A DNA stretch of 64,000 nt from Styela clava (taxonomy: Eukaryota), in the NCBI RefSeq assembly GCF_964204865.1, contig NC_135258.1, positions 14,074,001 to 14,138,000 of the forward strand, given 5' to 3'. Below the pieces are notes generated by a model, which was not told the origin of the DNA, made no database searches, and was given only the letters and a program-made list of their open reading frames with translations. Below are positions 18,201 to 56,700 of this stretch, one piece after another (the stretch's first letter is position 1; each line of letters opens with the position of its first letter). The position numbers were made by a program, and so were the translations under genes.

Positions 18201-21200
18201 AAAAAATGACATAAGACATAACGTACTAAAGGTTTAAAAATCTGAAGCGAGATTGTTTTTTCAACAGTCTGCGGGACTATAAATAAAATTACCATGTACG
18301 CTGCGACACCCCAGAAAATTGAACCTCCTCTGTAGTGATGTTGAGTTTTGTTAGTTCCATCTAGAAGAGAGCTCATCACCATACCTCCATAGCCAGTGAA
18401 GTCCGTCCAGTAAAGCCTGTGCATCGTTAATTTTTAATTAATTATTATCCACGAAAAACTAACATTTTAATATAGAGAAAAAAATTTTTTATTGCATTAG
18501 TTTATAAGAGTATAACTGAGTATGTTTTACTGCAATGTGATAATGCTGTTAAAATTCTGTAATTGAAATTGAGCAGACCTTTATCAGACAGCGAAAAAAA
18601 AAATGGATAAACAGATTATATTATAAACAATAATATTATTCCGTAAACTCGAGAAAAACTGACCAAGTGGTGAAACGCGTGATAAACAAAATTCTTTCTT
18701 GGCCGCTAATCTCTCAACGGTTACGGGCCTCAGAACAATAGCTTCATATAAACAATAAGATTATTCAAGATGAAGACTTGATATAAAAACACGAACTGAA
18801 AATCAGTTAACCATATTTTGTGATCGTGAAATATTTTGAAAGGATATCAAACTGTTTCCGTATTCCCGTGCATCCCGTATTACAAAAGTAATTCTTGAAC
18901 GTGAATAACAGTTTGTATTTTTAAGATAAAAACACACGCTATCAGGTCACGTAGCGATTACTTAATATTCGGCGGCTGACGGAATAAAAAGTCACATGAT
19001 TTTATTTAAATTTTATCTCAAGTGCACTAAGTTTACTTCCGCTAATTCCTGCCACATAAATTGCAATCGAATAACCAGGTATCCGACTACTTTCATTGTA
19101 AATGAATGTTTTGAAAACCAAGATGTGGAACTGCGCATTCTGCATTGTGATATAGAGGGAGTTTTAGTTATAATCGTCGAATAGTTAAAAGTTTAGTTAG
19201 CAAAACTGTCTGGTAGTAGGGAAAGTAATAGTCAGAAATGACATGATGCTGTTGAAAACCAAAAACACACGCTTATGTTACGATTAGTTTCAAGATATGA
19301 CGAAGAAAGTTTCGCTTCATTTTGCGGAAAACCACTTTTCGAATGAGTTTTATTGATTCTCAAAGTTTTATCTCTCAATTTTACCAAAAATATACACTTA
19401 TGCTTCGATTAGTTTTAAGACATGACGAAGAAAGTTTCGCTTTATTTTGCGAGAAACGACTTTTCGAATGAGTTTTACTGATTCTCAAAGTTTTATCCTA
19501 AATTTACAATGACATTCTACACATAATGATTCCTCGGACGCGCGGTCAAAACGTTCTAACAATAGCAAGCGGTTGAATGTGAGCAAGTGAATTACTTGAA
19601 ACAAAACACATTTCTCTGCATAATATGTCCTATGATTTTTCCCAAGCTAAAATCATAGCATACCTGTCATCTGTGTAATCAATGGTGATTCCAGTCACGT
19701 CGAAAACGTTTGGAAACTTGAAAAGAGTTTTCGGACTTTTTCCTGCCAAGTCTGTGACGATGATTTTAGATCCTAATGCTTTATATGTGGAAAATATCAA
19801 CAGTCTGAAAAAAATATTATTGAAACTTTTCAATAATTCTGATGATATAAAAACTTGGAATTGCCAAGAGTTTTGACAAAACAATTGATCAGTCCATTGA
19901 AAAATTGAAGCGATTTTGCCACAATAGAAATTTTATAGACATGTATGTAACTTTCAAACGATTTAAGAATAATTATACCTGTTTTCAGGTAGTGATAACT
20001 ATCTGACTACATTGGTACAACCCCTCGGGCGTGTTTTAAATTCATTTCGAAAGTTTAGTATCGACGCCCTTCGGTCTATAAGCTAGTATTATTTAGCAGA
20101 TTTCAGATAAACTTTTTACAAAGCAGCACTACAACAATGAAACATACCGTTTTACTGAATGTACTGCAAGCCCATATGCTGGATCTGGAGCTGTCCTGTA
20201 AACCGGGGTGTAATAGTTAAATGTGTTTTCCGCAGCCATTACCCATTTAAACTCGGAATCCGTCCAATATAAATTATCTGTTTTCCAATCATAAGCTATA
20301 CATTCAACTCCATGTGCCATTCCTTCGAAATATCTCTCGCCCTTTTTCTCTGTCATACTCCACACACCAATGTATTCAGACCTAAAGTATTTGAAAAAAC
20401 AAATGAGGTCGTGACTTTACAAACATTTGCTGCCGCACTTATGAAGGCCTTTTACGCGATAATCAATGCTAAATACTTTTGTACATTAATATGATTAGCA
20501 CAAGTATATGATATGTTATGTCCTCCCAAACGAGTTTTTTTCGTTATCGTTTTTTTATCCTGAATTTCATCTAGAAACCAAATATTTCTCTCTCTAAGGC
20601 GGATATTGTAGCAAGTACGTGTCTTTGAATGTGTCAAATTGCCTTGACACACATCCATGCTTTTACTTTTTTGTATATATACCTGTAGTCTGTAAAATAT
20701 AATCTTTTTTTATTGTAATCTGCTGCAAGTGCCCAGTACTCTGTCATTGAACGGTTTGACCCGGTGAGAACAGTAACATTGAAAGATCCACCATTATCGG
20801 TCTCCTGCTTGACAATCTCAGGATCGGCCTAAATTTATTGAAGCGTTAAATTGACGTCTATTTAGTATAGTTCAATAAATGCAATAAAAGTTCATTCAAA
20901 TAAACTTTGCATTACGCACCTGAACACGTAATAAGTGGGTACTTTCGGATGCGGCATCATAATTTGTCCAGATAACAAGTGAATCATCGGCTGTAAAATA
21001 TATGAAGAAATTTTATATCGTATTTTGAAAAATAGTTAATGAAAACCAACACGAAACATGCTAATTTATGGCATCAACAAATAATTGATATGTTCCTAAT
21101 TAAGTGCTGATATTTTTAACACAATTTTACAGTGTTAGATAATACGAGCCGAAATGTCGAATTCAAAATTGAAGTAAAGTGAAATAAAAAGAATAAAGAA

Positions 21201-24200
21201 ACACAATAAATTATTGTGTCTGTCCCCACAATATTAAAAGTCATATCAAAAAATTGTGTTCAAGAAACATTAAAGAAAACATTATAAATAAACAGATAAG
21301 ACATTGCCAATAAAAATAAATTTACTCCACTTTGTTCTAGATTTACGTCTTTCTTATTCATATTCTACGTATGAAATAGGATCGAAAGAGTTTATGAAGT
21401 AATGTTTAATAAACAGAAAAATATAATCTACAATAGCTTACGGCATTTTGAAATATTGCAATATTCCCATCGAGTTTTGTTATTTATAGTGTAGCACCAT
21501 GTTCCTCTCAAATCGTTATCTGGATTTCTAAAAGAAAAATTCAAGGATTAATTCCAAGCAATTAAAATCTTCATTATTCGGTTAATTTATCTGATGGGAT
21601 ACTTTTAGAAATCTCTACATTTTATAGTGTTAGAATAGTTCAATAGCCACACTTCCACAGAGTTTTAATCAAACTTAAGGCATTTGCTTTTTTCCTTCCT
21701 CAATCATAACTTTATTTAAACAATAATAATTTTGAGAAATATTTGCTTACGATGTCACCGAAACTGTATTATTAACACGGAATTTATATATTTCATAATA
21801 TTACAATGTATCTATTACCTAAACTGTTATTATTTGAAAGACAATAGGATCATGTGACGAACTAAAGCGATTCTGATTCCCGTGTATTTTCTGATATGAA
21901 TTACGTACGTTATTGTTTATGCCAAAATATAAAAATAGAATCTTTGTATTCAGATTTTTTTCCGATTTAGCGTACTTCTACATCAGCATATTTTGCCCGT
22001 TCCGTTATTGAAATAATCTTTCGGGACAAGTACACAATAAGACGACCCATTCATTACTCACAAAATGCTGATATATTTTTAGATAGATAGATATCAACTT
22101 TCTGTCCGTATATCTCAGCTTTTCAAGGTTTATGAAATTCTGCAATACTTATATTATTTTTCTCTGAAACAATTCACGTCTATATTCAACAATCAACATT
22201 CAATTATCAATCTTAAAATACTGAAAAGTGGTATGGGAGGATAATATATACATTTATTTCTTTGTTTATTCTGTATGATAATTCAATACTATATGACTTC
22301 AAAAACGGGGGTTAGGCATTGTTTTCATAGTTTATGTAGCTATTGTATATTAGGGTCTAATAATAAAGCGATATAGTTACCTGCAATAATTGTGGTGTCC
22401 ACCATCTTTCGGCACGTGTTTTGGTTTGTGTGGCTTATCAGTATCCCATCGCTGACACGTCGTTCCGGAACCTGTCACATCTCGCGTCCCTCTGTACCAT
22501 GTACTTGGGCCGTCGATGCAATCATCTAAGCACAAAAATCAGAGATAGCTTTAATATGGGGATGACGCTGTCCATGGGCGTTTATGCGCAAATAAATCGA
22601 ATATATCGCTTAGAATTCGAAATTTTGTCACACTTGTTCAGGTTCGCCATATCATTTACTTCGTAAGTTTAATATTAATAAAAGCGCTTTGTTTCGTTTC
22701 CAGTTTTATTTTTTAGAATTCATTGAGTACTTTTATATACGTCATTTTTGGGTTACCATGATGCTTCATCGATTGACATCATAATAAAACAAATCATATA
22801 ATCATATAAAAATCAATCATAATAAAACAATTACAAATAAATTGAAAATTTGTTTTCTTACTATTTGTATTCAATTAAAAAAAAAATTATTAAATCAGGT
22901 CAATTCAATCAAAAAATACTAATTGTACTTTCTTATTATATATATGTTGTTCATATTCTGAAGTTTAGATCACTTATAGCTTTGCACGTAACAAATCTGT
23001 ATAACATATTCTCATTGAACAGAAATTAGTTGATGGTATTCGTTATCTCCAATCTTTCGCGTAAGCTATAAATGTTGGCCATAATATTATTGTTAATAAC
23101 GTAATTAATGATTGACGATACTTAATCCATTAGTATTTATTATGGGCCAAAGGTCGATGACGAGTTAGCGATTTGTTGTAGAAAGTATCAATTAGTTTAT
23201 TGAAAGATAGAGTGCTCGCGCTATATTAACGATAAAAAGAACATTCGATAAAACTCCCATTTAGTGACATCAGCGAAACCAAAATGGTATGTTCGATAAT
23301 ACATAGTTCATATACGGGATAATTCATAGGGTTTTTAGGTAGCCAAGTTTCAACAAAGTGAAATCAAATTGCAATATGCTTTGCTCGCAGTTGCCGCTCT
23401 CGCTCGAATCCGTATGGAGAATTAAGAAACATCATTAGTCGATTCATACTTATAATCATCAGACGCAATATTCTCCGAATTTCGAATATGATTTTCGTGA
23501 TACTGTTAAATTATTAATTTCATTATTGAATCATAAAGACGAGAAATATTGTGATAAATACCATATAAGTGACTTGCAATTATTTTCAAAGTTAATTTAT
23601 AAGGAACGAAGAGCCGCGGGCTATGACAGAATTTCAGGAAATGGACATTTTTGGATTAAAACTTCAGGAAGCGCATTCACGCTTTCCATATATGATCTGT
23701 TAAATACTCTTCACTCAATTTTTAATTTTTTATATTGTTGTCTGGAATAATTCTTATTATACTTTGTTTTGTTCACTTGATTCCTACAGGTGTCGAAATA
23801 AGAGTTTTCAAAAACTTTTTTTTAGTTTTATCAGCGATAACTCAAAAAGCACAAATTTATGGAATTGTTACGAAATCTCGAAAAAAATGTCCAAAGACAA
23901 TAAAAAAAATGGTCGAAATGCGATAGTTTAATCTTTTTTGCAATCTTTCATCGTCGATGGTGGGAAAATTGCCTTTCTATATATATAATGTATACGATTA
24001 CAATAAGTAAAACGATAAGTTGAATTGCCAAATTAATTGTTCATTATAGATCATATGAAAATCTGCAAAATCGTTGATAACATTTGTTGAATTTATTCCA
24101 AATTGTGTTAGAAAATAATCACTGATTATGGCTTCTTTTCATTACAAAATAATATTTACAATGCTCAAAGGTGACTTCGTATCTTTTCGTGACTTTAACC

Positions 24201-24955
24201 CTGTTATTTTGCTTTATTTATTTAACATTAAATCACGAATCTAAGCAAATTTTTGTAAAAATATCAAGAGTTAGTGTGGCGACAACACGGACGTAAAATT
24301 CGGAACATGAAAGATAGTTATTTGTTGCATATCTCTTGTCACGGAATTTGCTGGTTTGCCCCGCGGGCTATCACTGTGAGAGTTAGAATAAGGTTTCATT
24401 TATGTCTCGTTGGCAGGTAATTTTGGAATTTTGTCGACCAGACATCTAGTATATTGTACTTAAACATGCGTCATGCCAACACGTCATCGCATCAGCAGAC
24501 CCCAAATTGCGTCCAACTGAATATTTTCACACTTGAAAACATCAAAATTGATAAACGGTTTATCTTCACTTGTAAAATATTATGTCATAAAGCCAGCTTA
24601 TAAAATGTATAATCTCGACAATATGCCACGATCTACTAAAGAAATGACGCGATATCGCGGGGTAAATTTCGAAAATCTTGGTAGTTTCGAAGAAATTTAT
24701 GAAAAGAGCATTCTCGAATACGCATTGTTGTTGGGACATTCTCGATTCTTTGCACACAAATTACAGAATCGTATGCGAAGTTAATAATTTTACATTTTCT
24801 GTCACAAATTTAGGTAATGTACATAATAAAATTATAAGTTATGCAGAAAAACATTTCAAGTGATTACCTGTTGACGTTGTTGTAGAACCCTGTACCCGCA
24901 CGCACGCCACGCAAAGGATGAGCAACGTGGCACCAATTACATAACGGTGATCCAT
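12275..24955 (-). CDS. Gene A: type I membrane protein SP-kringle-(YWTD propeller-EGF)x2-HYR-sushi-mucin-TM-short tail, 1172 aa, LRP-like ectodomain
   Basis: 24 GT-AG exons in frame (3519 nt): 24868-24955 (MDHRYVIGATLLILCVACVRVQG signal); 22381-22525, 21442-21527 (kringle, CQRWD..HNYCRNPDND..WCYT..RWEYC); 20920-20990, 20683-20828, 20148-20381, 19664-19804, 18293-18416, 18017-18188 (propeller 1); 17755-17883 (EGF); 17562-17678, 17271-17405, 16790-16964, 16559-16692, 16177-16333, 15493-15662 (propeller 2); 14888-15031 (EGF); 14586-14702, 14370-14507 (HYR, DISPPVAQNCP...YTARDKSGNVGYCRFTVNV); 14032-14289 (sushi); 13487-13600, 12840-13118 (Thr-rich); 12476-12605 (TM, GAIAAIIIVVLVLIIVIGVVVFV); 12275-12389 (tail, ...SNRYNVM*). 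Confidence 0.9.
12900..13118 (-). repeat. Coding (ACN)n low-complexity tract encoding a poly-Thr mucin stalk
   Basis: Plus strand is rich in GTT/GTA/GTG triplets; the minus frame reads TTTPTTTTPTTTTTTTTPVTTTT... Confidence 0.9.
19280..19498. repeat. Direct duplication (about 95 bp, two copies) in gene A intron 7
   Basis: CGATTAGTTT.AAGA.ATGACGAAGAAAGTTTCGCTT.ATTTTGCG...ACTTTTCGAATGAGTTTTA.TGATTCTCAAAGTTTTATC occurs at about 19281 and 19407. Confidence 0.8.
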
Positions 24956-36900: not shown

Positions 36901-39900
36901 GTGATGTTTTGTATTCGAAGAATTGATGTAAATACAACCCGGATATAAAATGCCTGTGGCTGAGATTGCGTCTCTCTAGCGATAATTTAAAATCAGTATG
37001 TTCACTTTTAACTGCGCAAAAAAATAAATGTAATTGCACAACAATTCATAACACACATTTACTAAATATTTAGAGTTACAATTGATCCGTACTGTATCAC
37101 ATATTATTTATTTATTATATAACTATAAATATACATTAGCATATAAAAAGTGCATGCTTTTTCAGGAGGTTATAATTTTCTGTTGAGTTGTGTTCTGTTA
37201 AATTGGTTTAGCTTACACTGGTCATTTTCAAGGTCACTGTGTCAGTTATGACCAACAACACGACTATGTTTCATTGTTTTCGATTGTATCGAACGGATGT
37301 GTTCACAATGACGCATCATTTTGTTCCAAATAAACGTTGTTATTATGTATATGATTTTTGATGTTGTCTTACAAAATAAATTCTTACATAAATGAACTTC
37401 TATGAAGTTGGTTGTAGTATGTTAATATTTATGAAACGTAATACCAGGTGCAGTCATGTAAGTTTTTGTAATAAGTCGGATATTTTCTTCCTCCTTCCGA
37501 AGATTATGTTTACGTGTTTTGACAATTGCATTTAATCGACACCGATTTAAAAAATGGTTAAAATTGAAGTATGTAAATATTGTAATAACTCTGTCGGAAC
37601 ATAACTACAAGACGTTGACTACAGACAACTTTAGCGCCACAGTGCTCCCAGCTTAGGTCTCAAGCAGTAATCTGCATTTCCATGGCTCACATGTTGCAAG
37701 ATTGTCGTATTACATAGAAAAAGGTTACTTGATCCTATAGCAGCGAATAATTTGTATTCAATTTTCTCAATCAATGAATTGCGCTTCATAAAATAAAATT
37801 TCATACTTTTACTACTACGACAATGACAAATATATCTATAAATAATTCAGGCTAGTGTCCATTGAATCTACGCCATTGAAAATAGCCAATTGCTCAATAG
37901 AAAATGGTTACTTCCTGTTAAAGGTGGGGAATCACGCAAACATTTTTGTAGCAAATTTGATTCTATATAATTTATCAAGATTTTTGGCGTTTACCGTTTG
38001 CATAAAATGGACTTCGTTTGCGAGACTCGTATTTTTAAAAGTCGACCCTGCCGAAATTGAACGCAAATTAGTATGTCCCGTTGATGACGTAGTGGTGAGA
38101 ACTAGTCGGCGAAACTTTGCATTAGGTCAAAGGCAATTATAGCATTCTGTGTACTCATTTTGAACCATGTGCTAGTTCTATTGGGCGGCGCATTTGGAGG
38201 AAGCTTTTGTGATTTAAATCAATACCAATATCTTTAAATAATATTATTGCATTATGAGAAATTGCAGTAAACTCAACTAATCGAGGTCAAGACGTACTCG
38301 AGTTCTGTGCCGCACCTTTCGCTGCAATATATTTTCTAGTGAAAAAGCGCATACCAGGCCATTTTTTGTCTCAAATGATCTAGATTTTATAATTCATGTG
38401 TGTTTACTCTGCTTATCTGATCCTATAACTAGTCTTTTTATTATATTTTCGGTATATATAAACTAACTGACTGTACCGGTATATGCGCGAACACTACCGT
38501 AACGTATGGAATGTGTAGTTGGTGGTTACAGCAGATTTCACAGGGATGGATCTGTCTTGAAGCAAAAAAAAGAAGGAGAAAATTATGGATAAAATTTTCG
38601 CAAGTAACTATTTCTGATGTCTCTCCATGGAACTAAAAGAAGACCTCTGAGTCGAAGGATCGTTTCACCCTTAAAATTATGTTGGGATCCATGCAAACTT
38701 CTACCCACAGCTCGAAACAACAATACTTCACGCAGTTATTCAAATCAGTTTTTATTTATTTTTAGCATTTTATTACAAGTTTTTATCATATGTAATTCAT
38801 TCATGCCAATAAATGTGTTGTCACGAATCTCCATTAGTTGATCGATAACAGCTGGACTGTGTTGTTAATAGCAGAGTGCACTGGAAAACGAAGTATACAA
38901 ATTAAATTGATAGAACTGACATAAAAAAAAGGATAATATCACCAGACAGCTTAGTAAGGTTCAACATACAAAAGTGTTTTGTTGCATAATAATGTGAAAT
39001 GAATATAAAAAAAACTGGGACATTATTGGGATTCTACGTTTATCTGGTACCGGTAGTAGACTTTTGGTAAATGTACAAATTGGCGATTTGAATTGGTTCA
39101 TACAAAAGTGTGACTGGGTATCATCATGCTTTGACTAAATATTTTATTAAACAGTCGATAAACGAAATAAAGGGTAAATACTTACTCTAGAATCAGTTCT
39201 TCAAAGCCTCCTAACGTACCGGATCATTACATAAAACGCCGTGGCTTGATCCCATCACATTCAGAACTTCTTATGTATTAGCATTTATGCTTAACAATAC
39301 ATTATTGTTTCAATCTTTATTAAACTAAGCGATGAGAAACTAGATTTAAACGCCAAAAACAGAGGTTGAACACCTTACCCGCCAATGGCGAGGGAGCTAC
39401 TTTCTGAAATGAGTTCTCACTACTACGTCATCAAAGGCCGTTTCCGAACCTGGGTCGATTTTCTTTGAAGCGGTTTTTAAAAATTCATAAGTAGAAAACT
39501 AAGTCCACTTTATGCAAGCGGTGAACGTTAAAAATCTTAAAAAAAATATATAGAATCAAATTTTCCACAAAAATGTTTGCGCAATAACCCACCTTTAATG
39601 TCGACGACACTGATTCAGAGTTATAAATATAAGAAGCCACTATGGGACTAGGCAGCACATTGGAGCCTGTAAGGTCGACGGGTTCTCTAGTCTTTGTCTG
39701 GTATTAGACCCACCATTTTATTTTTAAACGCAAGCGACAATATCTCGCCAAAGAACCAAAAGTTCTGGACAATTCACGGAGTCAGAGATCTTGTTTTTTT
39801 TCCGAAACCTGATTTTCAGATGACATCGAATCTATTGGAACATTATCTAAAATAAAAATATTTGTTAGATTTGATATTGTCTGCCTTAATTTGGATATTT

Positions 39901-42795: not shown

Positions 42796-45700
42796 TTACA
42801 TCACTACCCAAATTGCAAGAAATGTAATATATGAATATAATAAAAAATTCCTGTATACGGCATTATGTATTGATCCATTGCAGAAGTCTTTGCTGCAGCA
42901 TTTAAAGTTTGTTTCTTTTCTGTTGGCAATGTTTCTGCAATCCATACTTTTCATGCAATCCATTTTTACCTAAGCGTGATTAAAAGATGAATTTATTCGT
43001 TCATTTTTAATATAGAAAAGCCCTCGGAATCAATTATTAAGTTTTACCTAAAAAGTTATTTTCATCATGCAAATCAAGAAAACGACTCATGTGCTTCATA
43101 GACAGATTTACAGATTAGCCCAAAAAGAATGATACCTAAAAATGGAACATATACAATTTTCAAGGCAATATGGCAATATTAGTTACTTGGATGACAAGTT
43201 TAGTCCTTGAGCACGTGAAGTATAATTTAATAATAATTTTATTTTGACCTGCTTCTTTACATTGTATTACTTTTATACTCATTAAAAAAACTAAAATTCC
43301 ATGAAAACCTACCATATTGTCCTCCTTATATTTTGCACATGACCAAGAATCACTTTGTCTGAATGTGTCAGACGTATCAGAGTATGAATTGGTCTGAGAA
43401 CAGATTTTGTACTGATTGAGTGCAATACATTCTTCCTCTGTAGACCTCCCTCCGCATACCACGCAACGTAGTTTTGAGTTTGGATAAACAAATCGTCTTT
43501 TACTCTGCAATGTAAGAAAATCCTTCTAGTAAAGTCCTATTAAATACCAACTATTACATTTTCAAACCATACTGTGGGGTCCTAAAAGTCGGGGGCTTAT
43601 TTCATGTGTATATTCATTAGGTGGCATTAACACATATCGTTTTAAACACCTAAAAATAATTTTAGGAACGTAACCTCGCATATGTGAATTCGTGTGTATG
43701 TGACAGTGGTTCGGTGTGTGATATGCAAACACAGCCTCTTTGAAACGTGAATCTGTGTGAACGTATCTCATGCTAATCCACTGTATCTAAATATTGTATA
43801 TACAGAGTGTCTCATCATAGAGCGCTCATTTCCTCAGGCAACATAGTGTGGATACCTAGTAATATTTAGGTATTGTTTGCATTTTTCAACAACCCACAGA
43901 ATGATTAACCCAAAAAATGAGGAGCAAAATTGCTGATTGGCAAGAAGCTTGCGAATCAGTAAAGCAAACTTAGCGCCTCTTCAACAAAGAATTTGGAATT
44001 TATTCAACTTTGAATATTTTTCTCAGAGCGTCCGCTCCTAGGTCTTCCTGATCTTTGTGCATCAACTACAGATCCAGATTCCATGAATTTTTGATGAATT
44101 GCGTAACTCTTCGTCGTAAAAAGGCCGAATGCCGCCTTACTGTTTTATATGCTTCTTGCCAAACAGCAATTTTTCACTTAATTGTTTGGGTTAATCTCCT
44201 TGACATTCTGTGGGTTGTTGAAAAATGCAAACAGTACCTAAATTTTACTAGTTATCCATACTATGTTTCCGGAAAAAAAGAACACTCTATGATGAGTACC
44301 GGAAAAGCGAATTAAAATTAAAAGTGTTTACAGAACATTTGCAATAGAATAAAACAAATGTCTGGATAATTGTATCTACTTTTAGACTTAGGGTTCGGTT
44401 TGACTGGTATTGAGAAGGAGTTTGCAGTAATTTTGATTGACAAGAATTGCAAAACAATGACATCATTTCTTTATTACCTCAGTGAGAATGAAGGGTAGTC
44501 AATAAATGTCAACTATTGCCCGTCGTATCTAAATTAAAAAATAACTGGTCGAATAAAATGAATTCAATAATTAAATTTCGATTACTTACTTTAGTGCTAA
44601 GCAATGGAGTTAAAGTATGTGCGTAATTTGTTGGTCTGACTCCTCCAATATCTAAAGGCTTGATGTTCCTCGAAAACGTTGTGTTGCCAGCCCAGTTGAG
44701 TGCGACACATAATTTGTTTCTACAAACTGGTGCATCTCCAGGACAAGCACTTAAATTTAAAAACATAAATTGGTAAATGTACGCTGAATAGAAATAAGGC
44801 ATTATAACCTAATTTGTTTTTGACGAACAAATGACAAATTGCGGAAGTGGCGAACAGTAGCAGTAGATAATATTTAAGGGCATACATAATATTAGAATGA
44901 GAAATGTAAATCCACCCAAACCATTCTAATGCCTATATATGATTTTGTGTTTGTCATTATTTCATAAAGATATTAGCTATACCGGCCATGACATTAAATA
45001 ATACGAAGTAGACGATGACGATCAAAGTTACGCTCACAATAAGTTTTGACAAACAAGTGGTTTCAAGCTGTGACCGCATGGCAACAATAATATACAAAAG
45101 CGTGTAACGTTGTAGTTAGATTCTGACATTTTTCTGAAAACACTTATCTCATAAAAAGATAGCATGCAGTAAGGATTGAAGATTCTCGTTGGATGCGTTT
45201 GCTCAAAGATCTCAGTATTGAACATGTTTCAATTGTTTGTATGAGAGATATAAACCTGTCATTATCTCTGCAGTTCAAATATTCTACCAACAATTTAGGC
45301 AACAGTACCAATTCGTTGGCGTAGTTACCGAATTAGCTTCGATCGAGTCGTGTGTCAGCAGTCGACACAAGATAATTGAATTAGCGTCATTTCAGCCCTC
45401 AGTAAGCTAATAAAACCTTGTCTACAAGCTTTGTATGAGGAAGAAATTGATCGTGTACCAGAAATTTCCTTCTAGTCAATCCGGAAAATTTAATAAAAAT
45501 CCTTCATTATTTCGTTATCTTTAATTCAAGTTTTTATTCGTGGAGGAAACGGCAGGTACCTGCACCAATTTCCATACTGGTATGGGCGTCGAGGTTTTCT
45601 GGAAAACAAAGGCTTCACGTTCCCTGCTGGTCCGTATTTGCAGACGACCATGCTTGGTCTAAAATAAATATCTGATCCAACTCGAACATTATTTTTGCAT

Positions 45701-47128
45701 TTCGTCTTTCCACATCCAATCGCATGTGTGGTATCCCAAACTAACTGAGAATAAAGTATCAATATTGAAGTGCAATAAAGATAGTACTTGGTAAATGATA
45801 AAGTACTTGCAATGAAAAATGTAAATATATTTGTTTGTATTTTTTCTGACATCGGCATATATATTAAATGGAATCTAATAAAGACGATATATTTTAATTT
45901 TCAATATTATTTCAAATGTTGTCGAAATTTAAAAGTTTAACTATATAATCCAATGTGTAACATTTGAAAGAAAATTCTATTCAGTTATGGATTGACAATT
46001 CTGGCGCTTGTGGATGGATATAAAGTTTGAAATTTTGCATATACCCATATCTACTTTATCTGTAATACTTAGACGTATGTCATAATGTATTTCTCACTTC
46101 TTTTTATTTTGATGCAATTCGTACCTGTGTGTAACGTCCACATATTTTATTGGGGAAGCAAAAATTGGTTGAGTAATCATAATTGTTTCGTTCTCTGAAC
46201 CAATCCGCCACTGCCATGGTAACATCTTAATAAATAAAATAAATATTAATATTATTTATTCAGTTTTGCATATCAAATATAGTATCAACCAAAAATACGC
46301 TCCGTAATCACAGACGCGCTTGTGTGTTACAGTATAATATGCTTATTTATAGATTTAAACTAACTGTAGAACAATTTCAGTTCGAAACATCGTCATACAC
46401 CTTCACAATAAAAAAATATGATTCATGAACATTATTATTCACGGAGAAATATATACAATCGCTTACTTCTTAGCTCTTGATTAGTGATGAATATGTTTTC
46501 TCCGATAAGCCCATAGGGTTCAAAATTGTATCGGTTGCTCGGCGCATAAATACACTTATCAACGTATGATTGAGCTTGATCAGCCAGATCTGGGTCCCAA
46601 CTGAGCATCCGTAGATTTGATCCATTTGGTGACACCTGTATAAACATGCCAGAATATTTTGAATGTCGATGCTTGCGATTACAAGCTGTGATATATATAT
46701 TATATTATGATGAACGATTATGGCGATGTGGATATTTTATTTACTATTTATTTTATTTTTATTCAGTATCTGAAATAGTCCTGGTAATTTGCACTTGCAT
46801 GTAAATTTCCAACACCTCGGCAAGGATAAACTGACAAAACTTTAATGAAGTATGCTTCGAAGCATTTGAGAATAGCATTATTAGATCTACAACAATAGTT
46901 ATACGTAAGTAACAAGATAGTAGGAATAGCCTATATGACTTTGTCTTTCTTAATCCCTCCAAACCACTTTCGAAAACAATATACCTTTGTCCGATAGTAA
47001 TTGTGCACCCTGAGCATATTGACTACTTCATCTTTTATAATCTGGCTGGATGAGATATCGACCGAATATACTAATATTAAAAAAATATTAAATACTTTAA
47101 ACTTAGAAATTGCACAAATACGTTTCAT
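42796..47128 (-). CDS. Gene B: CAP (CRISP/GLIPR-like) domain fused to a Ly6/uPAR three-finger domain, with GPI-type signal, 374 aa
   Basis: 7 in-frame GT-AG exons (1125 nt): 46985-47128 (signal, HNYYR); 46467-46635 (NLRMLSWDPDLA..GENIF); 46125-46225 (WFRE..CGRYTQ); 45560-45744 (LVWDTTHAIGCG..VCKYGPAGN..PY..G.WC); 44590-44749 (hinge SACP..C.NKLC); 43313-43504 and 42796-42969 (LRCVVC..C..C..C..C..C..CCSKDFCN, then GS and hydrophobic FLLYSYITFLAIWVVM*). Confidence 0.88.
43803..44297. mobile_element. Foldback MITE with about 150-bp imperfect inverted arms in gene B intron 5
   Basis: CTCATCATAGAG..TAGGTATTGTTTGCATTTTTCAACAACCCACAGAATG..TTGGCAAGAAGC is mirrored by GCTTCTTGCCAA..CATTCTGTGGGTTGTTGAAAAATGCAAACAGTACCTA..CTCTATGATGAG. 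The left end TA|CAG is Tc1/mariner-like. Confidence 0.8.
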
Positions 47129-50756: not shown

Positions 50757-53700
50757 TTATATGCAACTTGCTTTCTTCTTTGATAACGCCAAGCACGAAG
50801 ACTTGCATTTCTTTCGCAAGCACGGATTTGGAAGACGTTCTAAATAAAAATAAAATAGTTATATAAAATATTATAAATGAGGCATATGAAGGTGGCATAG
50901 GTAAAATAGTTGCGATTTTATTATATTAAAATCTTTTGCATGTCACGCCATATTACTTGATACATACCACACTCTCTGTTAGGTCATGAATCAACTGACT
51001 TTCAAACGTGTATATGTATTATAATACATATCATGTTTTAGGGAAATATAGCCTATAATGTGTTATATATACTCACTGATATATTTTCTGGTAAATGATC
51101 TACTGTAGACAGACAAGCTGGACGCTTTAAAGAAAACTGAAGGCCCAAAGTTGACCAAAGCCTTTGGCCCAGTCGCGCCAAGTTTGTATCGCAAAAGATG
51201 TAATTTCCTTTCATCAGAAATATAAGCGAATCCTCTATGAACTTTCAATCTAAAATTTGAAAAGTTATATTGTAACTTCTAATACAATGTACCATTATAT
51301 TCATGTAAAAGATAAAAAAAAAAATTACTTTGTCAAAAAGTATTTCTCTGAATATAAATAGTCCATGAGGTCGTTCCGTTTGTATTTTTTAAGTGGAACT
51401 GGTGCAATGAGTTTCATCAAAGGAATTTCGTATATAGAACCGTCTTTGGAATCCATCACGTATAGCTTGTTTCCTAAACAAAAAAGTGTTATTTGTATGC
51501 GGTCTTGTACTAATTCTGAAGGTAAATCCGATTATAATAAACATAAAAATATTCGTACTTTCATAATCGATGTCGATTCCATATGGTAAGTTAAGATTAT
51601 CGAGCACAACTTGCTTTCCACTTCCATCAAATCTGCAGCGAATTACTTTACCTGATCCCTGTTCTCCCATGGTGTCGGTCCAGTAAATCATTCTGAAAAA
51701 AACTAAATGTTTATCTTAAGGAACAAAGCCCTATATTTTTTTATATTTTTGCATAATTCGAAATATTACATTTGTAACTGACATATTTTCATTGTTTATG
51801 ATTATTGAATTACAATGAATTACACTTTCTATGAAATAATTGTGCTATCTGTATATATACCGGTATATGAAATTTGCTATTGGAAAAGATGTTTTAAATA
51901 TACATTAAAAACATTGTGACGTACTTTTGTTTGGAATCTACCGCAAGCGCTTTCACGTCTGAGTTCGTTTCTTTATTTTCAACGATAACTTTTTTGTTTT
52001 TCCCATATCTATTCATAAAGGCAATATCGTTGTTCTCATTAACATAAAAGATGTCTTTTGTGACAGGATCCAACTTTATATCTTTCACTGTAAATCAGAG
52101 AAATAAATCCGTAGAAGTTTAGAATCGGAAAAAAACATATAAAACGATTCAAGAAAATTCATGCAATAGCCTACTTACCTTTTCCCGTTACTGAAGATCC
52201 TAGAGGTTTAGCATCTTTATTAAGTAACGCAAATCTAACTCTTCCCATTTTGAAGTCCGATGTATCAGAATCATACATATAAACCGTGCCGGTGGAAACA
52301 TCTGTGGTCATGGTGCTGATATGGTTTGTTTTACCTAAAAATTGAAAAAAATATGTCAAAAAAACTATTTTTTTTGGATAAAATATTATTAAAGCAAGGT
52401 ATAAAATAGAACACTTCAACTCACCGAAATGAACAACACTGAACTCTCCTTTTGAAGATAAAGGAATCTGATATACTTCACCCGAGGCATCGTCGAGTGC
52501 CAGCAAATATTCATCATTGACAATATCTGAAAGCAGTTTGTAAAATCGTCAGCGCCTCGAATAACAATTTTAATACATTTTTCGCCTTCAGCCTTTGGCG
52601 CATGTTTATCAAGACCAATATAGAGAAACTAATCCACAAATACAGCTGTGTATGTTATGTGTCAAAACAACACAAAATAAACAAGAAAGGCAGCTCTTCT
52701 GTTGTTGAACTAGGAAATAAGTATTGACTTACTTGGAACACATTTTCCAGTTTTCGGTTGCAATTTATAACCTGGAGAACACACGCATTTGAAACCTTTT
52801 TGATTTGGAAGACAAATGCCACCACACGTTTTCTCGCATATGTTCGATTCCAAAGTTCCTGAAACAATAGACGCCATACAAATTTATATGAAGAATTTTA
52901 ATTAAATAAAATAACAATTTAATTAAAACAAAGGTGCGTTTCTCGTAATCATAGACACGAAGGCTAAATCGAAGTATAACGGACATGCAATCTGTCACAG
53001 TAGACTACCGAAACCGTCACAAGGCGCCTTAAATTCCTTAATGACGTCATTACACACAAAAAACGAATTTCATAGAAATTTTTGAAATAAATAAATATAA
53101 TAGCCATCTAACGAAAAATACAATCTCTAACCACTAAAAATGCCAAAGCAATTGGTCCAGTACTTGATGAGAAAAGAGATTTTTTCATAACAATACGAAG
53201 AACAAGTGAGCTATGCTCAAATATATGGACACGTAGCGCCACCCAATGGCAATAATTTTGATGACGTCATAGCGAAAAAAAAGTAATAGCCTTCTGGAGA
53301 AAAATTTTGTCTTTAACCACTGAAAATTTCAAAGCAATTGGTCCAGTATTCGAAAAAAAAGCGATTTTTTTAAAAATGGAGACAAATAATAACAATAACA
53401 ACATAATATTGAAACGATCGTTATGTCCACTAAACGTGTCCAAAAATACCAACAAGAACAACGACAACATAATAACAAAACTTTCCAAATGTACATTTCG
53501 TGTCCAAAAATTGGTTGACGTATATCATTAATGTCCGCGTGCGGTTTGGATACGACTGTCACAATATAATTCTGTCTGAAAAGTAGTTGCTATGGTATAC
53601 GTATTCAATTTGTATGTAGGCCTGCCTGCATACCTTCTAGTAATTATTCATGCATGGCAAGCTCCGAACTAACAATTACAAACGTAAGTTATAGATTTTA

Positions 53701-56700
53701 GTTTTTTCTCAGCTCGTGACTTATTTTTAGATACCGATGGAAATTCGATTTAATATTACTCTTTTATTCCAACAGAAATGTCTAAAAATAATGCATCGAT
53801 CAAAACGAATTTATCTTACTTTCTGGTGAACTCTTATCTGCTAATATAGCAATCCCATGCGGTAAATCCGGTCTGCTAAATGTGAAGATTTGATTTGTTC
53901 CTTTCCTCAAAATTTGAACATGATAACGAATGTAATCAAAATAATTGTATCGTTTTTGAGAATCAGAAACATATATGTAATCCTGAAACACAGAAAATAT
54001 AATAAATATAATTTAAATCCTTAATATCAGATTTAAGGATTGTTCAAAATGTTCCGTATCCTATATCCTCACTTGAAAAAAGCTACTTGGTTAGCCTTGT
54101 GATTTGGAAAGATATTACAAAGTTGCAAGCAGCAAGATTTTTTTTTCATCATTTCTACGTGAATATCTGATTTATTCCAAGTTCGATTTTGGACGATGTA
54201 TAGATGTAAAACACAAATATCATAAAATCATACTTCGTGGACGGCTATATCCCGAAGTTCGGAAGATTTTTGGAAGTAATGTTCTGTTTTATCGGATCCA
54301 TCGAAACGACAACTGAGAATCTTGCTTGCGTAACCGAGATAATCTGTCCAGTAAATTCTGTAGAAAAGCATAAGCATGTATAATAGATGCGAGGCATAAC
54401 ATGGGCACATAGCATGAAATGTGCAAGTTATTCTGTACCGTTCGTCATCAGCTGCAAGTCCCGTAACTTCGATAACATCCGGGTATCTAAATAGAACTTT
54501 CGCATCTTTTCCAGCTAAATCAGTCATGATAATTTGTGTGTCGAAAACCTTTGAATCTTTTCTGACGTAAGTTGAAAACACCAATTTCCTTTTAAAAAGT
54601 ATATTGCGTTAAATATTCATAATGAAACAATAATTATGGTTTAGGATTTAGCTCATTGACGTGTACAGCATAGGTATGAGCGGGTTCATAAGATATGCCT
54701 GAAGCGTTATTATCATACGAGACAATTCTGTTAAGAAATATAATCTTGTGTGGCATGACAATGTTCATATGATATCTTGCAAAAGTTTATGTAAACTTGC
54801 TTCTCACCTATGTTTTTGTAAAACCGCTATAGCCTGTGGCTTATAAGGTTCTGTGTTGTATATGGGAAATTGAGCTTTAAAATCCTTATCGGCAACCCAC
54901 ACTGATTTTGTTTTGCAATCTGTCCAGTAAAAATTTTTGGTAACATAATCCTGTGCTATAGAGTGTATGTCACCCACTTTTCCTTGCAAGTGACGTTCGA
55001 TTGCCGAACTTTTGACATCCATGATACCAAAGTAGTTATCTCTGAAAAACGAAAAAGGAATATCAGCGACGTTTTTTTTTTATACTTTTTATCTCAGTGG
55101 CAGGATCTCGCTTGTGATAGTGATTCGTGTAATTCTATCCAAACGTTGGAAATAACCAAGCAATAAATGAAATTTTTATCTATTTTTTATTATTCTCGTG
55201 TACATTTAAAGATAGCATTTATAACAGAAAAGAGCGATGGCGAACAATAAGAAATTTCCTATGAAGCTTTGTATAAGAAAATAAGGGAGAAAGATCAAGA
55301 TTAGTAAAGGTTATGATTACAAAGCAAATAATATAATAGACTTCATTGCCAAGACGGTATGTAGACAGAAATAAATGCCTGGTACAAAATGCTTCAGGCG
55401 TTTTGATAGATCTTATGAAATGAACCAAAATTATTTTGTAATTTATACGTATTTTGTGAATAAGTACATTAAATGGGTTATTAGACTCACTTCAAGTCTG
55501 TGAAAAAGATTTTTTCTCCTTTCTCATCCGTTTCTACTGCCTTGAAAATAGAATTTTTGTGAACTTCAACGTGCATTCCACCTGCCGGTACGTTGTTTTG
55601 TGATGAATATTCTGGATCAGCCTACAGATTCAAAATTAGAAAAATATTAGAAAAAAAGATATGACGTGAAAAATATATAGGATATAATTTCCATTTGAAA
55701 CTTCCATTTTATTTTTTTTCAGTCTATTAAATAACTACAGTTTTTCGGTAATTTCAAATTTTTGACAAATGTTCATTTCTGATGAACTGTCGATATGGCT
55801 ACCTAAAGAACTTGAAACTCGCAACTTTTAGTTTTTTTTTAAGTTATCCACCAACCTTTGCATGATCAAATATAGAACTGTTTTGTTTCGCGTTGTATCC
55901 TGCCCATACTACTAAAACTTTGCTTTCTGTAAAATTAAAGTGAAGACTATTTAGTAGAGACATCATAAGTAAAAAATTGTATGAATATTTTCCTTTCCAT
56001 CAATGTTAAAAAAATCATATCAGTTTGATTCATCTTATAATAGGACCAGTTTGAAACCTGATTGAAACGGAGATCACGGCCACGTTGTGTAGCGCCACCC
56101 ACACGTAAAAACACTTCATATTGATATGCGTCAGGTCTAGACGAAGCATTTCATAATGAATCCTGTACTTGAAACGTTTTATGACTGAACGGTGATATTT
56201 GTAAGTAGTAATGGGAATCGCAATACAATAACTTACCGCATTTAGGAAGGTCACAGTATTCCCATCTAACAGCAGGATCGGTGGTGTAACACCAAGTGCC
56301 TCTAGGATCTCTGTCTGGATTTCTGAATTTATTGTTCAAATATTATTAGCTTACATTACTAAATATTGCACTAGAAAAACGGGAAGAGCTTTTATTATAA
56401 AGTTATTATTTCGTCATTTATGTTTAATAAATTATGCGTAACTACGTGGTCTAATTCACGCATAAATTCAAATACTTTTAGCGACGCCCTACGTCACCAT
56501 ACGTAAAGCCCGGTACCGAGAAACATTTGAAGTTGTGCGCATTTCCGGTAAAAAATATTCCTTGGCCTTTCCGTCTATAATGACCTCAGTTAGTTTTATA
56601 AAGGTGCTATGTAATTTAGTTTTGATACTAAATTAAAATCAAATACTTATAATTTAGATACCTGCAATAATTATGATCACCACCATCTTGCGGGATTTTC

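What the first reader, a model, noticed from the sequence alone, without database searches (positions are those of the whole stretch)
42796..47128. CAP/CRISP domain fused to a GPI-anchored Ly6/uPAR three-finger domain
Seen: after a full CAP domain and Cys hinge, two further in-frame exons (the last absent from the ORF track) encode a 10-Cys domain running LRCVVC...CCSKDFCN, then GS and a hydrophobic C-terminus. Established: CCxxDxCN plus a GPI signal is the Ly6/uPAR (CD59, Bouncer, SPACA4) signature. Usual CAP C-terminal partners are ICR/ShK, LCCL, C-type lectin, EGF or a TM/GPI tail. Ascidian Urabin is a GPI-anchored sperm CRISP-family protein that binds the vitelline coat, and fish Bouncer is an egg Ly6 protein for sperm recognition. 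Inference: this fusion, which I do not recognise, is a candidate cell-surface gamete-recognition or immune molecule.
Basis: partly seen in the sequence, partly recalled or inferred. Interest (0 to 1): 0.8.

Follow-up and report, generated by a model that had tools for sequence, protein, structure and literature searches.

The report
Sea-squirt CAP gene with Ly6 tail
A sea-squirt gene appears to join a CAP (CRISP-like) domain to a lipid-anchored three-finger Ly6 domain, a combination I could not find described, but no RNA evidence yet shows the two halves are made as one protein.

Summary
On the minus strand, 47128..42796, seven exons with canonical GT..AG introns and matching phases give one 374-codon frame. 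It reads signal peptide, CAP domain, 4-Cys hinge, about 50-residue linker, 10-Cys Ly6/uPAR-like (LU) domain, then Asn-Gly-Ser and a hydrophobic tail.

CAP is supported by Pfam on exon 2 and by PDB hits. LU identity is moderately supported, and only exon by exon:
- Exon 7 is 39% identical to the terminal exon of a stand-alone GPI-type Ly6 gene of the same genome.
- Exon 6 is the best match in the window to an HMM of this genome's LU first-half exons.
- Pfam's own LU models stay below threshold.

One gene is the best reading. Intron 5 holds no leader exon and is of ordinary size.

Limits: no exon was covered in four RNA-like runs, and no relative of exon 6 turned up in 1.84 billion proteins. My paper searches found no CAP-LU architecture. 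Orthology to ascidian Urabin, and any function, are untested. The spliced protein was never joined, searched or folded.

Verdict: a probable new domain combination, of moderate interest.

The parts
46985..47128 (-). Exon 1: ATG, signal-peptide-like leader (about the first 22-28 codons) and the start of the CAP domain with the HNYYR motif
   Evidence: ATG at 47128, phase-0 donor AAG|GTATAT. The highest 11-residue hydropathy window is 2.43, starting at residue 15. The cleavage site is my reading; no predictor was run.
46467..46635 (-). Exon 2: CAP domain, with a GENI motif and an NGS sequon
   Evidence: PF00188 CAP, E 4.4e-5, 24.7 bits against a cut-off of 21.1; all 10 PDB hits at E<=1 are CAP proteins; the own-genome PF00188 scan hits this exon (C10:14120495-14120623).
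46125..46225 (-). Exon 3: CAP domain, ending in GRYTQ. The junction codon with exon 2 is AAT (Asn).
   Evidence: for boundaries and phases; aligns over 33 of 33 residues at 51.5% identity to the matching exon of a paralogue (L014).
45560..45744 (-). Exon 4: end of the CAP domain (LVWD..., VVCKYGPAGN) and the first hinge Cys
   Evidence: PF00188 E 0.084, 14.2 bits, below the cut-off; all 9 PDB hits are CAP proteins; 14 paralogous exons in the genome, the best at 48% identity.
44590..44749 (-). Exon 5: the other three hinge Cys (44707-44748), then a Cys-free linker with an NTT sequon. It ends in a strong phase-0 donor AAA|GTAAGT.
   Evidence: single copy in the genome; no Pfam family, so no Crisp/ICR domain.
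43505..44589 (-). Intron 5 (1085 nt). It contains a roughly 486-nt MITE-like element with inverted arms at 43811-43965 and 44134-44296, and no leader-like exon.
   Evidence: One search shows the inverted repeats (93 nt at 88% and 63 nt at 81% complementary). One search found 0 ATG-initiated hydrophobic exons with a GT donor; contigs from the RNA-like runs lie only on this repeat.
43313..43504 (-). Exon 6 (phase 0 to 0): 11 linker residues, then the LU first half (43471..43313) with Cys 1-5, starting LRCVVC
   Evidence: 15.1 bits against an HMM of 16 LU first-half exons, reached by 1 of 2000 shuffles; top of 1593 window stretches, E 0.005; the exon family's profile hits SLURP1, CD177, LYPD6, Lynx1, candoxin and GPIHBP1 in the PDB; single copy.
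42799..42969 (-). Exon 7: the LU second half with Cys 6-10 (42969..42877, ending CCSKDFCN), candidate omega site N-G-S (42871-42879), an 8-residue spacer and a 16-residue hydrophobic tail
   Evidence: 21 of 54 residues identical (39%), pairwise E 2e-9, to the terminal exon of a GPI-type Ly6 gene (L037); genome-wide E 0.0036 and 0.0117; weak CD59 and Activin_recp hits; the nearest named Atlas clusters are all in the LU clan. One search gives the hydropathy.
42796..42798 (-). Stop codon TAA
42715..42720 (-). ATTAAA, a candidate polyadenylation signal 76 nt after the stop
   Evidence: This is a motif only; 9 such hexamers occur in the 2.3 kb scanned.

Best explanation
I read this as one seven-exon gene of an ascidian. 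Earlier notes of this scan name the species as Styela clava; I did not verify that.

The predicted protein has this order:
- a cleavable signal peptide
- a complete CAP/PR-1 domain
- the 4-Cys hinge seen in CRISP-type CAPs
- a linker of about 50 residues with no Cys
- a 10-Cys Ly6/uPAR (three-finger) domain encoded by two exons
- a GPI-attachment signal (omega site around the Asn-Gly-Ser that follows the last Cys, a short polar spacer, a hydrophobic tail)

Expected mechanism, inferred rather than shown:
- The leader takes the protein into the ER.
- Disulfides form: 5 in the LU domain and 2 in the hinge.
- GPI transamidase replaces the tail with a lipid anchor.
- The LU domain then sits next to the membrane and holds the CAP domain out on a flexible linker, probably in raft-type membrane.

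Origin: the two LU exons look like exons 2 and 3 of an ordinary GPI-anchored Ly6 gene. They have lost their own leader exon and are attached through a phase-0 intron behind a CAP gene.

The most likely role is cell-surface recognition or adhesion. My best single guess, at about 0.3, is a gamete-surface binder of the Urabin kind.
For: What is shown:
- 6 of 6 introns are canonical, the phases are consistent and the frame runs 374 codons without a stop.
- The exon-5 donor (AAA|GTAAGT) and the exon-6 acceptor (pyrimidine-rich ...TTGCAG|A) are both phase 0.
- Intron 5 is 1085 nt, of which about 486 nt is a MITE, so it is intron-sized rather than intergenic.
- It holds 0 candidate leader exons, so the LU exons have no signal peptide of their own.
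- CAP: exon 2 passes the Pfam cut-off. All 19 PDB hits of exons 2 and 4 are CAP proteins. The HNYYR, GENI, GRYTQ-LVW and VVCKYGPAGN motifs are present.
- LU second half: exon 7 matches terminal exons of GPI-type Ly6 genes of the same genome. Those genes split the domain at the same place, after Cys 5.
- LU first half: exon 6 fits the genome's LU first-half HMM, with 1 of 2000 shuffles reaching its score, and it ranks first of 1593 window stretches.
- The profile of that exon family finds 8 LU or three-finger proteins among its 9 PDB hits.
- The C-terminal tail is hydrophobic.
Against: - No RNA support. None of the 11 listed runs holds the stretch as RNA. In the 4 RNA-like runs laid, only 4 of 30 bins had depth, all on the intronic repeat and none on an exon.
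- No protein in 1.84 billion representatives matches exon 6, not even a copy from this genome. Public gene models therefore probably do not include it.
- PF00021 did not report the locus among its 17 genome hits. No LU Pfam model reaches its cut-off on either exon.
- Exons 6 and 7 alone give no relevant PDB hit, and the second-half profile gives none.
- Without the two rows that exon 7 itself had found, exon 7 is not distinguishable from its shuffles (217 of 2000 reach its score).
- The Cys4-Cys5 spacing is 20 residues. The other LU first halves of this genome have a Cys 6 residues after Cys 4, a nearly invariant column.
- Reading through the exon-5 donor gives a stop after 26 codons, with an AATAAA 34 nt later. 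A CAP-only product is therefore possible.
- No orthologue or second CAP-LU gene was found.
Confidence: 0.6

Rival explanations
1. There are two units. The CAP gene ends with exon 5, giving a secreted CAP-plus-hinge protein that terminates in the retained intron or elsewhere. Exons 6 and 7 are a leaderless remnant of a Ly6 gene that landed downstream and is not translated.
For: No RNA covers any exon, so the exon 5-6 junction is unproven. Read-through of the exon-5 donor stops after 26 codons, with an AATAAA nearby. No database protein contains exon 6. The phase match alone has a 1 in 3 chance.
Against: Both LU exons are intact: 10 Cys, no stop, flanked by good splice sites, and ending in a proper stop. 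Exon 5 ends in a consensus GTAAGT donor. A remnant without a leader would be expected to decay, yet exon 7 still aligns over 54 residues, tail included, with a functional-looking Ly6 exon. AATAAA-type hexamers are frequent in this AT-rich DNA, 9 in 2.3 kb.
Confidence: 0.2
2. The locus makes several products by alternative processing. These would be the GPI-anchored CAP-LU form, a secreted CAP-only form by intronic polyadenylation after exon 5, and possibly a small Ly6-only form by splicing exon 1 (phase-0 donor) directly to exon 6 (phase-0 acceptor).
For: The phases allow exon 1 to exon 6 splicing, and exon 6 is a symmetric 0-0 exon. A stop and an AATAAA follow the exon-5 donor.
Against: This is purely combinatorial, with no read evidence of any isoform. 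An exon 1 to exon 6 product would carry about 20 residues of a truncated CAP helix.
Confidence: 0.1
3. The whole locus is a silent or recently dead gene, an unexpressed duplicate with no function.
For: No expression was seen in 4 of 4 runs laid. No matching protein is in the collections.
Against: All seven exons are open, with intact splice sites, CAP motifs and all Cys. The gene is single copy and only 35-48% identical to its nearest paralogues, so it is old and would have decayed if dead. The published S. clava transcriptomes I read about are embryonic and larval stages, with no mention of testis. A gonad-specific gene would therefore be missed. The identity of the coded runs is unknown.
Confidence: 0.1

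Closest known systems
Ascidian Urabin (HrUrabin, CiUrabin): GPI-anchored CRISP-family sperm proteins that bind the vitelline-coat proteins VC70 / VC57
   Same: Both are ascidian proteins with a signal peptide, a PR/CAP domain and a C-terminal GPI-attachment signal. The predicted mature size here (about 320 residues plus N-glycans) is close to the 40 kDa reported for CiUrabin. Source: passages of the reviews PMC9265791 and PMC8849226.
   Different: Those reviews describe only a PR domain and a GPI site and mention no three-finger domain. I could not obtain a Urabin sequence: the primary paper is not held and the length window of the protein search excludes full-length proteins. Orthology is therefore untested. 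Expression of this gene is unknown.
Vertebrate and venom CRISPs (CAP + hinge + ICR/Crisp domain)
   Same: The CAP domain is followed by a 4-Cys hinge. The best PDB matches for exons 2 and 4 include stecrisp, triflin, natrin and pseudecin.
   Different: There is no Crisp/ICR domain; exon 5 has no Pfam hit. After the hinge come a linker, an LU domain and a GPI signal. The CAP1-type motif reads GRYTQ, with Arg where many CAPs have His (that comparison is recalled, not tested).
GPI-anchored mammalian sperm CAP proteins (GLIPR1L1; macaque MAK248)
   Same: A CAP domain held on the cell surface by a GPI anchor, as in the sperm proteins of PMC6824042 (passages and reference list only).
   Different: As far as I recall, those proteins have no LU domain between the CAP domain and the anchor.
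Single-domain GPI-anchored Ly6/uPAR proteins (CD59, PSCA, Lynx1, Bouncer/SPACA4, and this genome's own Ly6 genes, for example at C13:13.43 Mb)
   Same: A 10-Cys pattern starting LxCxxC and ending CCxxxxCN, with the omega site right after CN and a hydrophobic tail. The domain is split over two exons after Cys 5. Exon 7 is 39% identical to L037's terminal exon.
   Different: A whole CAP domain, hinge and linker stand in place of a bare signal peptide. There is a 20-residue Ser/Thr/Asp-rich stretch between Cys 4 and Cys 5. Pfam LU models were not reached exon by exon.
LU-domain chimeras catalogued in invertebrates (LU with Kunitz, C1q, fibrinogen-like, Ig, MAM, thioredoxin, permease, 7TM or kinase domains)
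   Same: An LU domain combined with an unrelated extracellular module, confined to a single lineage (PMC13719153, Results read in full).
   Different: CAP is not among the partners listed. That survey covered no tunicates, and its supplements were not seen.

Membership tests
CAP / SCP / PR-1 superfamily (PF00188) | Profile match above the curated cut-off | tested here: met
   Exon 2 alone scores 24.7 bits against a cut-off of 21.1 (E 4.4e-5). Exon 4 adds 14.2 bits at the C-terminal end of the model. The own-genome PF00188 scan also hits exon 2.
CAP / SCP / PR-1 superfamily (PF00188) | The four CAP signature motifs (patterns recalled from PROSITE and the literature) | tested here: met
   Read in the exon translations: HNYYR in e1, GENI in e2, GRYTQ|LVWD across e3/e4, VVCKYGPAGN in e4. 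There is one deviation, K where I recall N/Q/R/H/S. The patterns are from memory.
CRISP subfamily proper | C-terminal ICR / Crisp domain (PF08562) after the hinge | tested here: not met
   The 4-Cys hinge is present (end of e4 plus start of e5). Exons 5, 6 and 7 give no Crisp-domain hit at E<=1.
Ly6/uPAR (LU, three-finger) family | Profile match to an LU-clan Pfam model above its cut-off | tested here: inconclusive
   Only half-domains could be tested. For exon 7, CD59 scores 15.3 bits (cut-off 33.9) and Activin_recp 16.5 bits (cut-off 20.9). Exon 6 gives none. The genome scan with PF00021 did not list the locus. The joined domain was not searched, by rule.
Ly6/uPAR (LU, three-finger) family | 8-10 Cys with N-terminal LxCxxC and C-terminal CCxxxxCN | tested here: met
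   There are 10 Cys, from LRCVVC to CCSKDFCN. The spacing after Cys 5 (x12, x5, x12, CC, x4, CN) is in the usual range. The Cys4-Cys5 gap of 20 residues is unusual.
Ly6/uPAR (LU, three-finger) family | Homology to bona fide LU genes | tested here: met
   Exon 7 against L037's terminal exon: 39% over 54 aa, pairwise E 2e-9; genome-wide E 0.0036. Exon 6 against the first-half HMM: 1 of 2000 shuffles reach its score, and it ranks first in the window at E 0.005. That exon family hits SLURP1, CD177, LYPD6, Lynx1 and others in the PDB. Weak point: the exon-7 signal depends on two rows.
Ly6/uPAR (LU, three-finger) family | Three-finger fold with the canonical disulfide map | not testable with these tools
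The domain is split by intron 6.
GPI-anchored proteins | Small omega, omega+1 and omega+2 residues, a polar spacer, a C-terminal hydrophobic tail and an N-terminal signal peptide | tested here: inconclusive
   Read in the sequence: N-G-S after the last Cys, an 8-residue spacer, and a 16-residue tail of mean hydropathy 2.07. The leader has an 11-residue window of 2.43. No GPI or signal-peptide predictor was available.
Urabin (ascidian sperm GPI-anchored CRISP-like proteins) | Sequence orthology to HrUrabin or CiUrabin | not tested
   No Urabin sequence could be fetched.
Urabin (ascidian sperm GPI-anchored CRISP-like proteins) | Testis-specific expression, sperm-surface location, binding to the VC70/VC57 egg-coat protein | not testable with these tools
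   No RNA run covers the gene. The rest needs bench work.

The most novel reading that the evidence does not exclude
Ascidian Urabin-type sperm adhesins would be CAP-LU chimeras. On this reading, what the literature calls the 'GPI-anchor region' of Urabin is a cryptic three-finger domain, and this gene is the Styela member of that group. One molecule would then combine the two protein families that vertebrates use separately at fertilization: CRISP/GLIPR1L1 on one side, and Bouncer/SPACA4/TEX101-type Ly6 proteins on the other.
Probability: 0.15. Interest if true: 0.75.

Novelty: new variant of a known kind. Interest (0 to 1): 0.45.

Why it matters
CAP proteins and Ly6/uPAR proteins are both recurrent players in sperm-egg recognition and in innate defence, but as separate molecules.

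A natural protein that tethers a CAP domain to the membrane through a three-finger domain would be a new way of building a surface receptor from two well-studied modules.

It would also give a concrete example of exon shuffling through a phase-0 intron in a chordate close to vertebrates.

It makes one question directly testable: does the poorly described C-terminal part of the ascidian sperm adhesin Urabin hide an LU domain?

If the two halves turn out not to be co-transcribed, the locus is simply a CAP gene next to a Ly6 relic and is of little interest.

Tried and rejected
Homology searches that gave nothing:
- Exon 6 against 1.84 billion representative proteins gave only an unrelated 1092-aa repeat protein, P0001. 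This used the single job of that tool. An exon-4 query might have reached full-length CAP orthologues instead.
- The search for homologous proteins found no candidate sharing words, both with the exon-4 stretch (length window 68-217 aa) and with exon 7 (31-100 aa). By the tool's length rule this says nothing about proteins of about 374 aa.
- Metagenome scans with exons 4 and 6 found no relative.
- An exact look-up of five ATG-started ORFs of the locus found none in the collection.
- ESM Atlas with exon 6 gave only sub-threshold, unrelated clusters at 0.84.
- PDB searches with exon 6, exon 7 and the second-half profile gave nothing relevant.

RNA evidence:
- The look-up of sequencing runs listed 11 runs. 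Four hold the DNA, all from one study, and none holds it as RNA.
- Read laying on X5, X6, X9 and X7 put contigs only on the intronic repeat.

A second CAP-LU gene in the genome:
- No paralogue lies in the window.
- In the 20 fetched loci (about 160 kb) I found no multi-Cys exon ending CC..CN with a tail. The loci cover the nearest CAP paralogues (C17, C8, C9, C4, C3, C5, C6) and some others (C1, C18).
- By reading the tables, none of the 17 PF00021 hits lies near any of the 49 PF00188 hits. That scan also missed this locus, so its sensitivity is limited.

Rejected:
- A stretch at 38632..38444 outranked exon 7 against the second-half HMM (E 0.021). On reading it lacks the Cys pattern and the final C-N, so I take it as chance.
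- The Pfam DUF4057 hit of exon 6 (17.8 bits against a cut-off of 23) was taken as noise.

Literature:
- Search listings were seen. Two were wasted on 'CRISPR' and 'neurabin' matches.
- Zero papers hold both PF00188 and PF00021. Zero hold CRISP, Ly6 and Ciona together. Three hold 'CAP domain' and 'Ly6', none of them relevant.
- Supplements were closed. Those of PMC13719153 list all LU proteins found and might bear on the novelty claim.

Left out by rule: the spliced protein was never joined, typed, searched or folded. There is therefore no AlphaFold model, no whole-domain Pfam score and no full-length homology search.

Full report
**What is there.** The gene lies on the minus strand. Reading the three minus-strand frames and the boundaries gives seven exons:
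- e1 47128..46985
- e2 46635..46467
- e3 46225..46125
- e4 45744..45560
- e5 44749..44590
- e6 43504..43313
- e7 42969..42796, stop included

All 6 of 6 introns begin GT and end AG. Their lengths are 349, 241, 380, 810, 1085 and 343 nt. The phases fit (0, 1, 0, 2, 0, 0) and the frame has 374 codons.

**CAP half.**
- Exon 2 alone passes Pfam's CAP model: PF00188, E 4.4e-5, 24.7 bits against a cut-off of 21.1.
- Exon 4 matches the C-terminal end of the same model below the cut-off (E 0.084). Exons 1, 3 and 5 give nothing.
- Against PDB sequences, all 10 hits of exon 2 and all 9 hits of exon 4 (E<=1) are CAP proteins: Brugia VAL, snake CRISPs, insect venom allergens and GLIPR1.
- The motifs HNYYR, GENI, GRYTQ-LVWD and VVCKYGPAGN are readable in the exon translations. 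That these are the CAP signatures is recalled, not computed.
- The last Cys of exon 4 plus three Cys at the start of exon 5 form the 4-Cys hinge seen in CRISPs.
- After the hinge comes a Cys-free stretch of about 50 residues, made of the rest of exon 5 and the first 11 residues of exon 6.
- No Crisp/ICR domain follows.

**LU half.**
- Exons 6 and 7 carry five Cys each. The pattern is C-x2-C-x8-C-x8-C-x20-C-x12-C-x5-C-x12-CC-x4-CN, starting LRCVVC and ending CCSKDFCN.
- Then come G-S, eight mostly polar residues and a 16-residue tail of mean hydropathy 2.07.
- Pfam support is weak on half-domains. Exon 7 gives CD59 (E 0.017) and Activin_recp (E 0.018), both three-finger families and both under their cut-offs. 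Exon 6 gives nothing relevant.
- A genome-wide PF00021 scan lists 17 places but not this one.
- Exons 6 and 7 alone find no LU chain in the PDB.

**Support from the genome's own Ly6 genes.**
- Exon 7 finds, besides itself, three exons elsewhere in the 377-Mb assembly, at E 0.0036, 0.0117 and 0.093.
- The best two are terminal exons ending CC....CN plus a hydrophobic tail. One of them is preceded by an exon that begins NCYQCN, so it belongs to an ordinary two-exon LU domain split after Cys 5, as here.
- Pairwise, exon 7 is 39% identical over 54 residues to that exon, tail included (E 2e-9).
- For exon 6 I built an HMM from 16 LU first-half exons of this genome, located with PF00021 and by reading. 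Several begin LQCVVC, with the same x2, x8, x8 spacing.
- Exon 6, which was not in that model, scores 15.1 bits. One of 2000 shuffles reaches this.
- Among all 1593 stop-free stretches of at least 25 aa in the window, the exon-6 stretch ranks first, at E 0.005.
- A profile of 11 such exons plus exon 6 finds 9 PDB sequences, 8 of them LU or three-finger proteins: SLURP1 at E 0.0011, CD177, LYPD6, Lynx1, candoxin and GPIHBP1.
- The ESM Atlas places exon 7 nearest to QVR, PSCA, CD59 and Ly6 clusters at 0.84-0.90, which counts as a lead only.

**Results against the LU reading.**
- The exon-7 HMM signal (10.8 bits, 3 of 2000 shuffles) vanishes when the two rows that exon 7 had itself found are removed (2.3 bits, 217 of 2000).
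- The second-half profile finds nothing in the PDB.
- The Atlas gives nothing for exon 6.
- Exon 6 lacks the Cys that is nearly invariant 6 residues after Cys 4 in the other first halves. It has instead a 20-residue Ser/Thr/Asp-rich stretch before its fifth Cys.

I conclude that the LU assignment is probable but not proven. The fold itself could not be tested.

**One gene or two.** In favour of one gene:
- Exon 5 ends in a consensus donor (AAA|GTAAGT) and exon 6 begins after a pyrimidine-rich TTGCAG acceptor. Both are phase 0.
- Intron 5 is 1085 nt, of which about 486 nt is a MITE-like element with inverted arms at 43811-43965 and 44134-44296. The gap is therefore intron-sized.
- A scan of intron 5 for an ATG-started hydrophobic exon with a GT donor in any phase found none. 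The LU exons thus have no leader except exon 1 of the CAP gene.
- Both halves are intact and single copy.

Against one gene:
- There is no transcript evidence at all. Of 11 runs listed, 4 hold the DNA (one study) and none holds it as RNA.
- In the 4 RNA-like runs I laid, contigs lie only on the intronic repeat (4 of 30 bins) and on no exon.
- The published S. clava transcriptomes I read about are embryonic and larval (passages). An adult or gonad gene could be missed, but I do not know what the coded runs are.
- Exon 6 has no match, not even a copy from this genome, among 1.84 billion representative proteins. Public gene models probably omit it.
- Read-through of the exon-5 donor would stop after 26 codons, with an AATAAA 34 nt later. 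A secreted CAP-only product cannot be excluded.

I put the single-gene CAP-LU-GPI model at 0.6.

**Relatives.**
- The window holds no paralogue.
- The genome has at least 49 CAP-model hits in several clusters. The nearest relatives of exon 4 are 35-48% identical: four tandem genes on C17, plus genes on C8, C9, C4, C3, C5 and C6.
- In the 20 loci (about 160 kb) I could fetch around these and other CAP genes, I found no LU-type terminal exon. The rest could not be fetched.
- Cross-species evidence could not be reached. The word-based protein search sees only proteins up to 1.75 times an exon-sized query and found no candidates. Metagenome scans were blank, as were exact look-ups.

**Comparison with what is known.**
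- Earlier notes of this scan name the genome as the ascidian Styela clava (unchecked). The assembly size of 377 Mb lies between the published 340-Mb assembly and the 407-Mb k-mer estimate.
- Ascidian sperm carry GPI-anchored CRISP-family proteins: HrUrabin, and CiUrabin at 40 kDa, which is testis-specific and sits on the sperm head. They bind the egg-coat proteins VC70 and VC57.
- The two reviews I read in passages describe these proteins only as a PR domain plus a GPI-attachment site. The primary paper is not held.
- The present gene has the same outline and a similar predicted size, plus a recognisable LU domain. Whether it is the Styela Urabin, and whether Urabins themselves contain this domain, is open.
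- A 2026 survey of LU architectures in 387 invertebrate genomes lists Kunitz, C1q, fibrinogen-like, Ig, MAM, thioredoxin, permease, 7TM and kinase partners, but no CAP. It included no tunicate (Results read in full; supplements closed).
- No paper in the library holds PF00188 with PF00021, or CRISP with Ly6 and Ciona. The three that hold 'CAP domain' and 'Ly6' are irrelevant. InterPro could not be consulted.

**Verdict.** The locus is most simply a single gene for a GPI-anchored CAP protein whose membrane-proximal module is a three-finger domain captured from a Ly6 gene. Both modules are ordinary and the combination appears undescribed, which makes this a new variant of a known kind. Missing RNA and missing orthologues keep confidence and interest moderate. 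Any function, whether sperm-egg coat binding like Urabin or immune recognition, is inference by analogy.

Noticed in passing
window 43811-44296 (intron 5): A MITE-like element of about 486 nt with long inverted arms (93 nt at 88% and 63 nt at 81% complementary). It is the only part of the locus covered by contigs of the four RNA-like runs, at 90-95% likeness, so it belongs to a repeat family present in many transcripts or in DNA carry-over. An internal ORF piece reads like a mariner-type transposase remnant; that is my reading only.
   Followed up: partly
window about 51390-55080, minus strand: Several stop-free stretches carry YWTD-type motifs (for example ...IYWTD...RFDGS...). They look like exons of an LDL-receptor class B beta-propeller gene, the upstream neighbour of the CAP-LU gene on the same strand. 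They may belong with the LRP-like mosaic receptor noted earlier at 12275-24955, or be a second such gene.
   Followed up: no
G000 C17:12.100-12.127 Mb (L006-L008): Four tandem CAP genes, the nearest paralogues of this gene (43-48% identity over exon 4). They have an acidic N-terminal extension exon and a separate hinge exon (PYKKGKGC..C..C..LC). The C-terminal end was not resolved and no LU exon was seen.
   Followed up: partly
G000 C13:13434127-13434762 (L037 4127-4762): A stand-alone two-exon LU gene with 12 Cys and a GPI-type tail. Its terminal exon is the closest relative of exon 7 in the genome (39% identity). Its leader exon was not identified.
   Followed up: partly
window 44470-44511: Read-through of the exon-5 donor reaches a stop after 26 codons, and an AATAAA follows 34 nt later. 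This is a possible intronic polyadenylation site that would give a secreted CAP-only isoform. It may equally be chance in AT-rich DNA.
   Followed up: no
window 38444-38632, minus strand: This stretch scored slightly better than exon 7 against the LU second-half HMM (E 0.021). On reading it has only C..CC and no closing C-N or further Cys, so I take it as a chance hit.
   Followed up: yes
window 46125-46139 / 45736-45744 (GRYTQ | LVW): The CAP1-type motif has Arg where many CAP proteins have the His of the conserved His/Glu tetrad (recalled). If so, the putative metal-binding site of this CAP domain may be altered.
   Followed up: no
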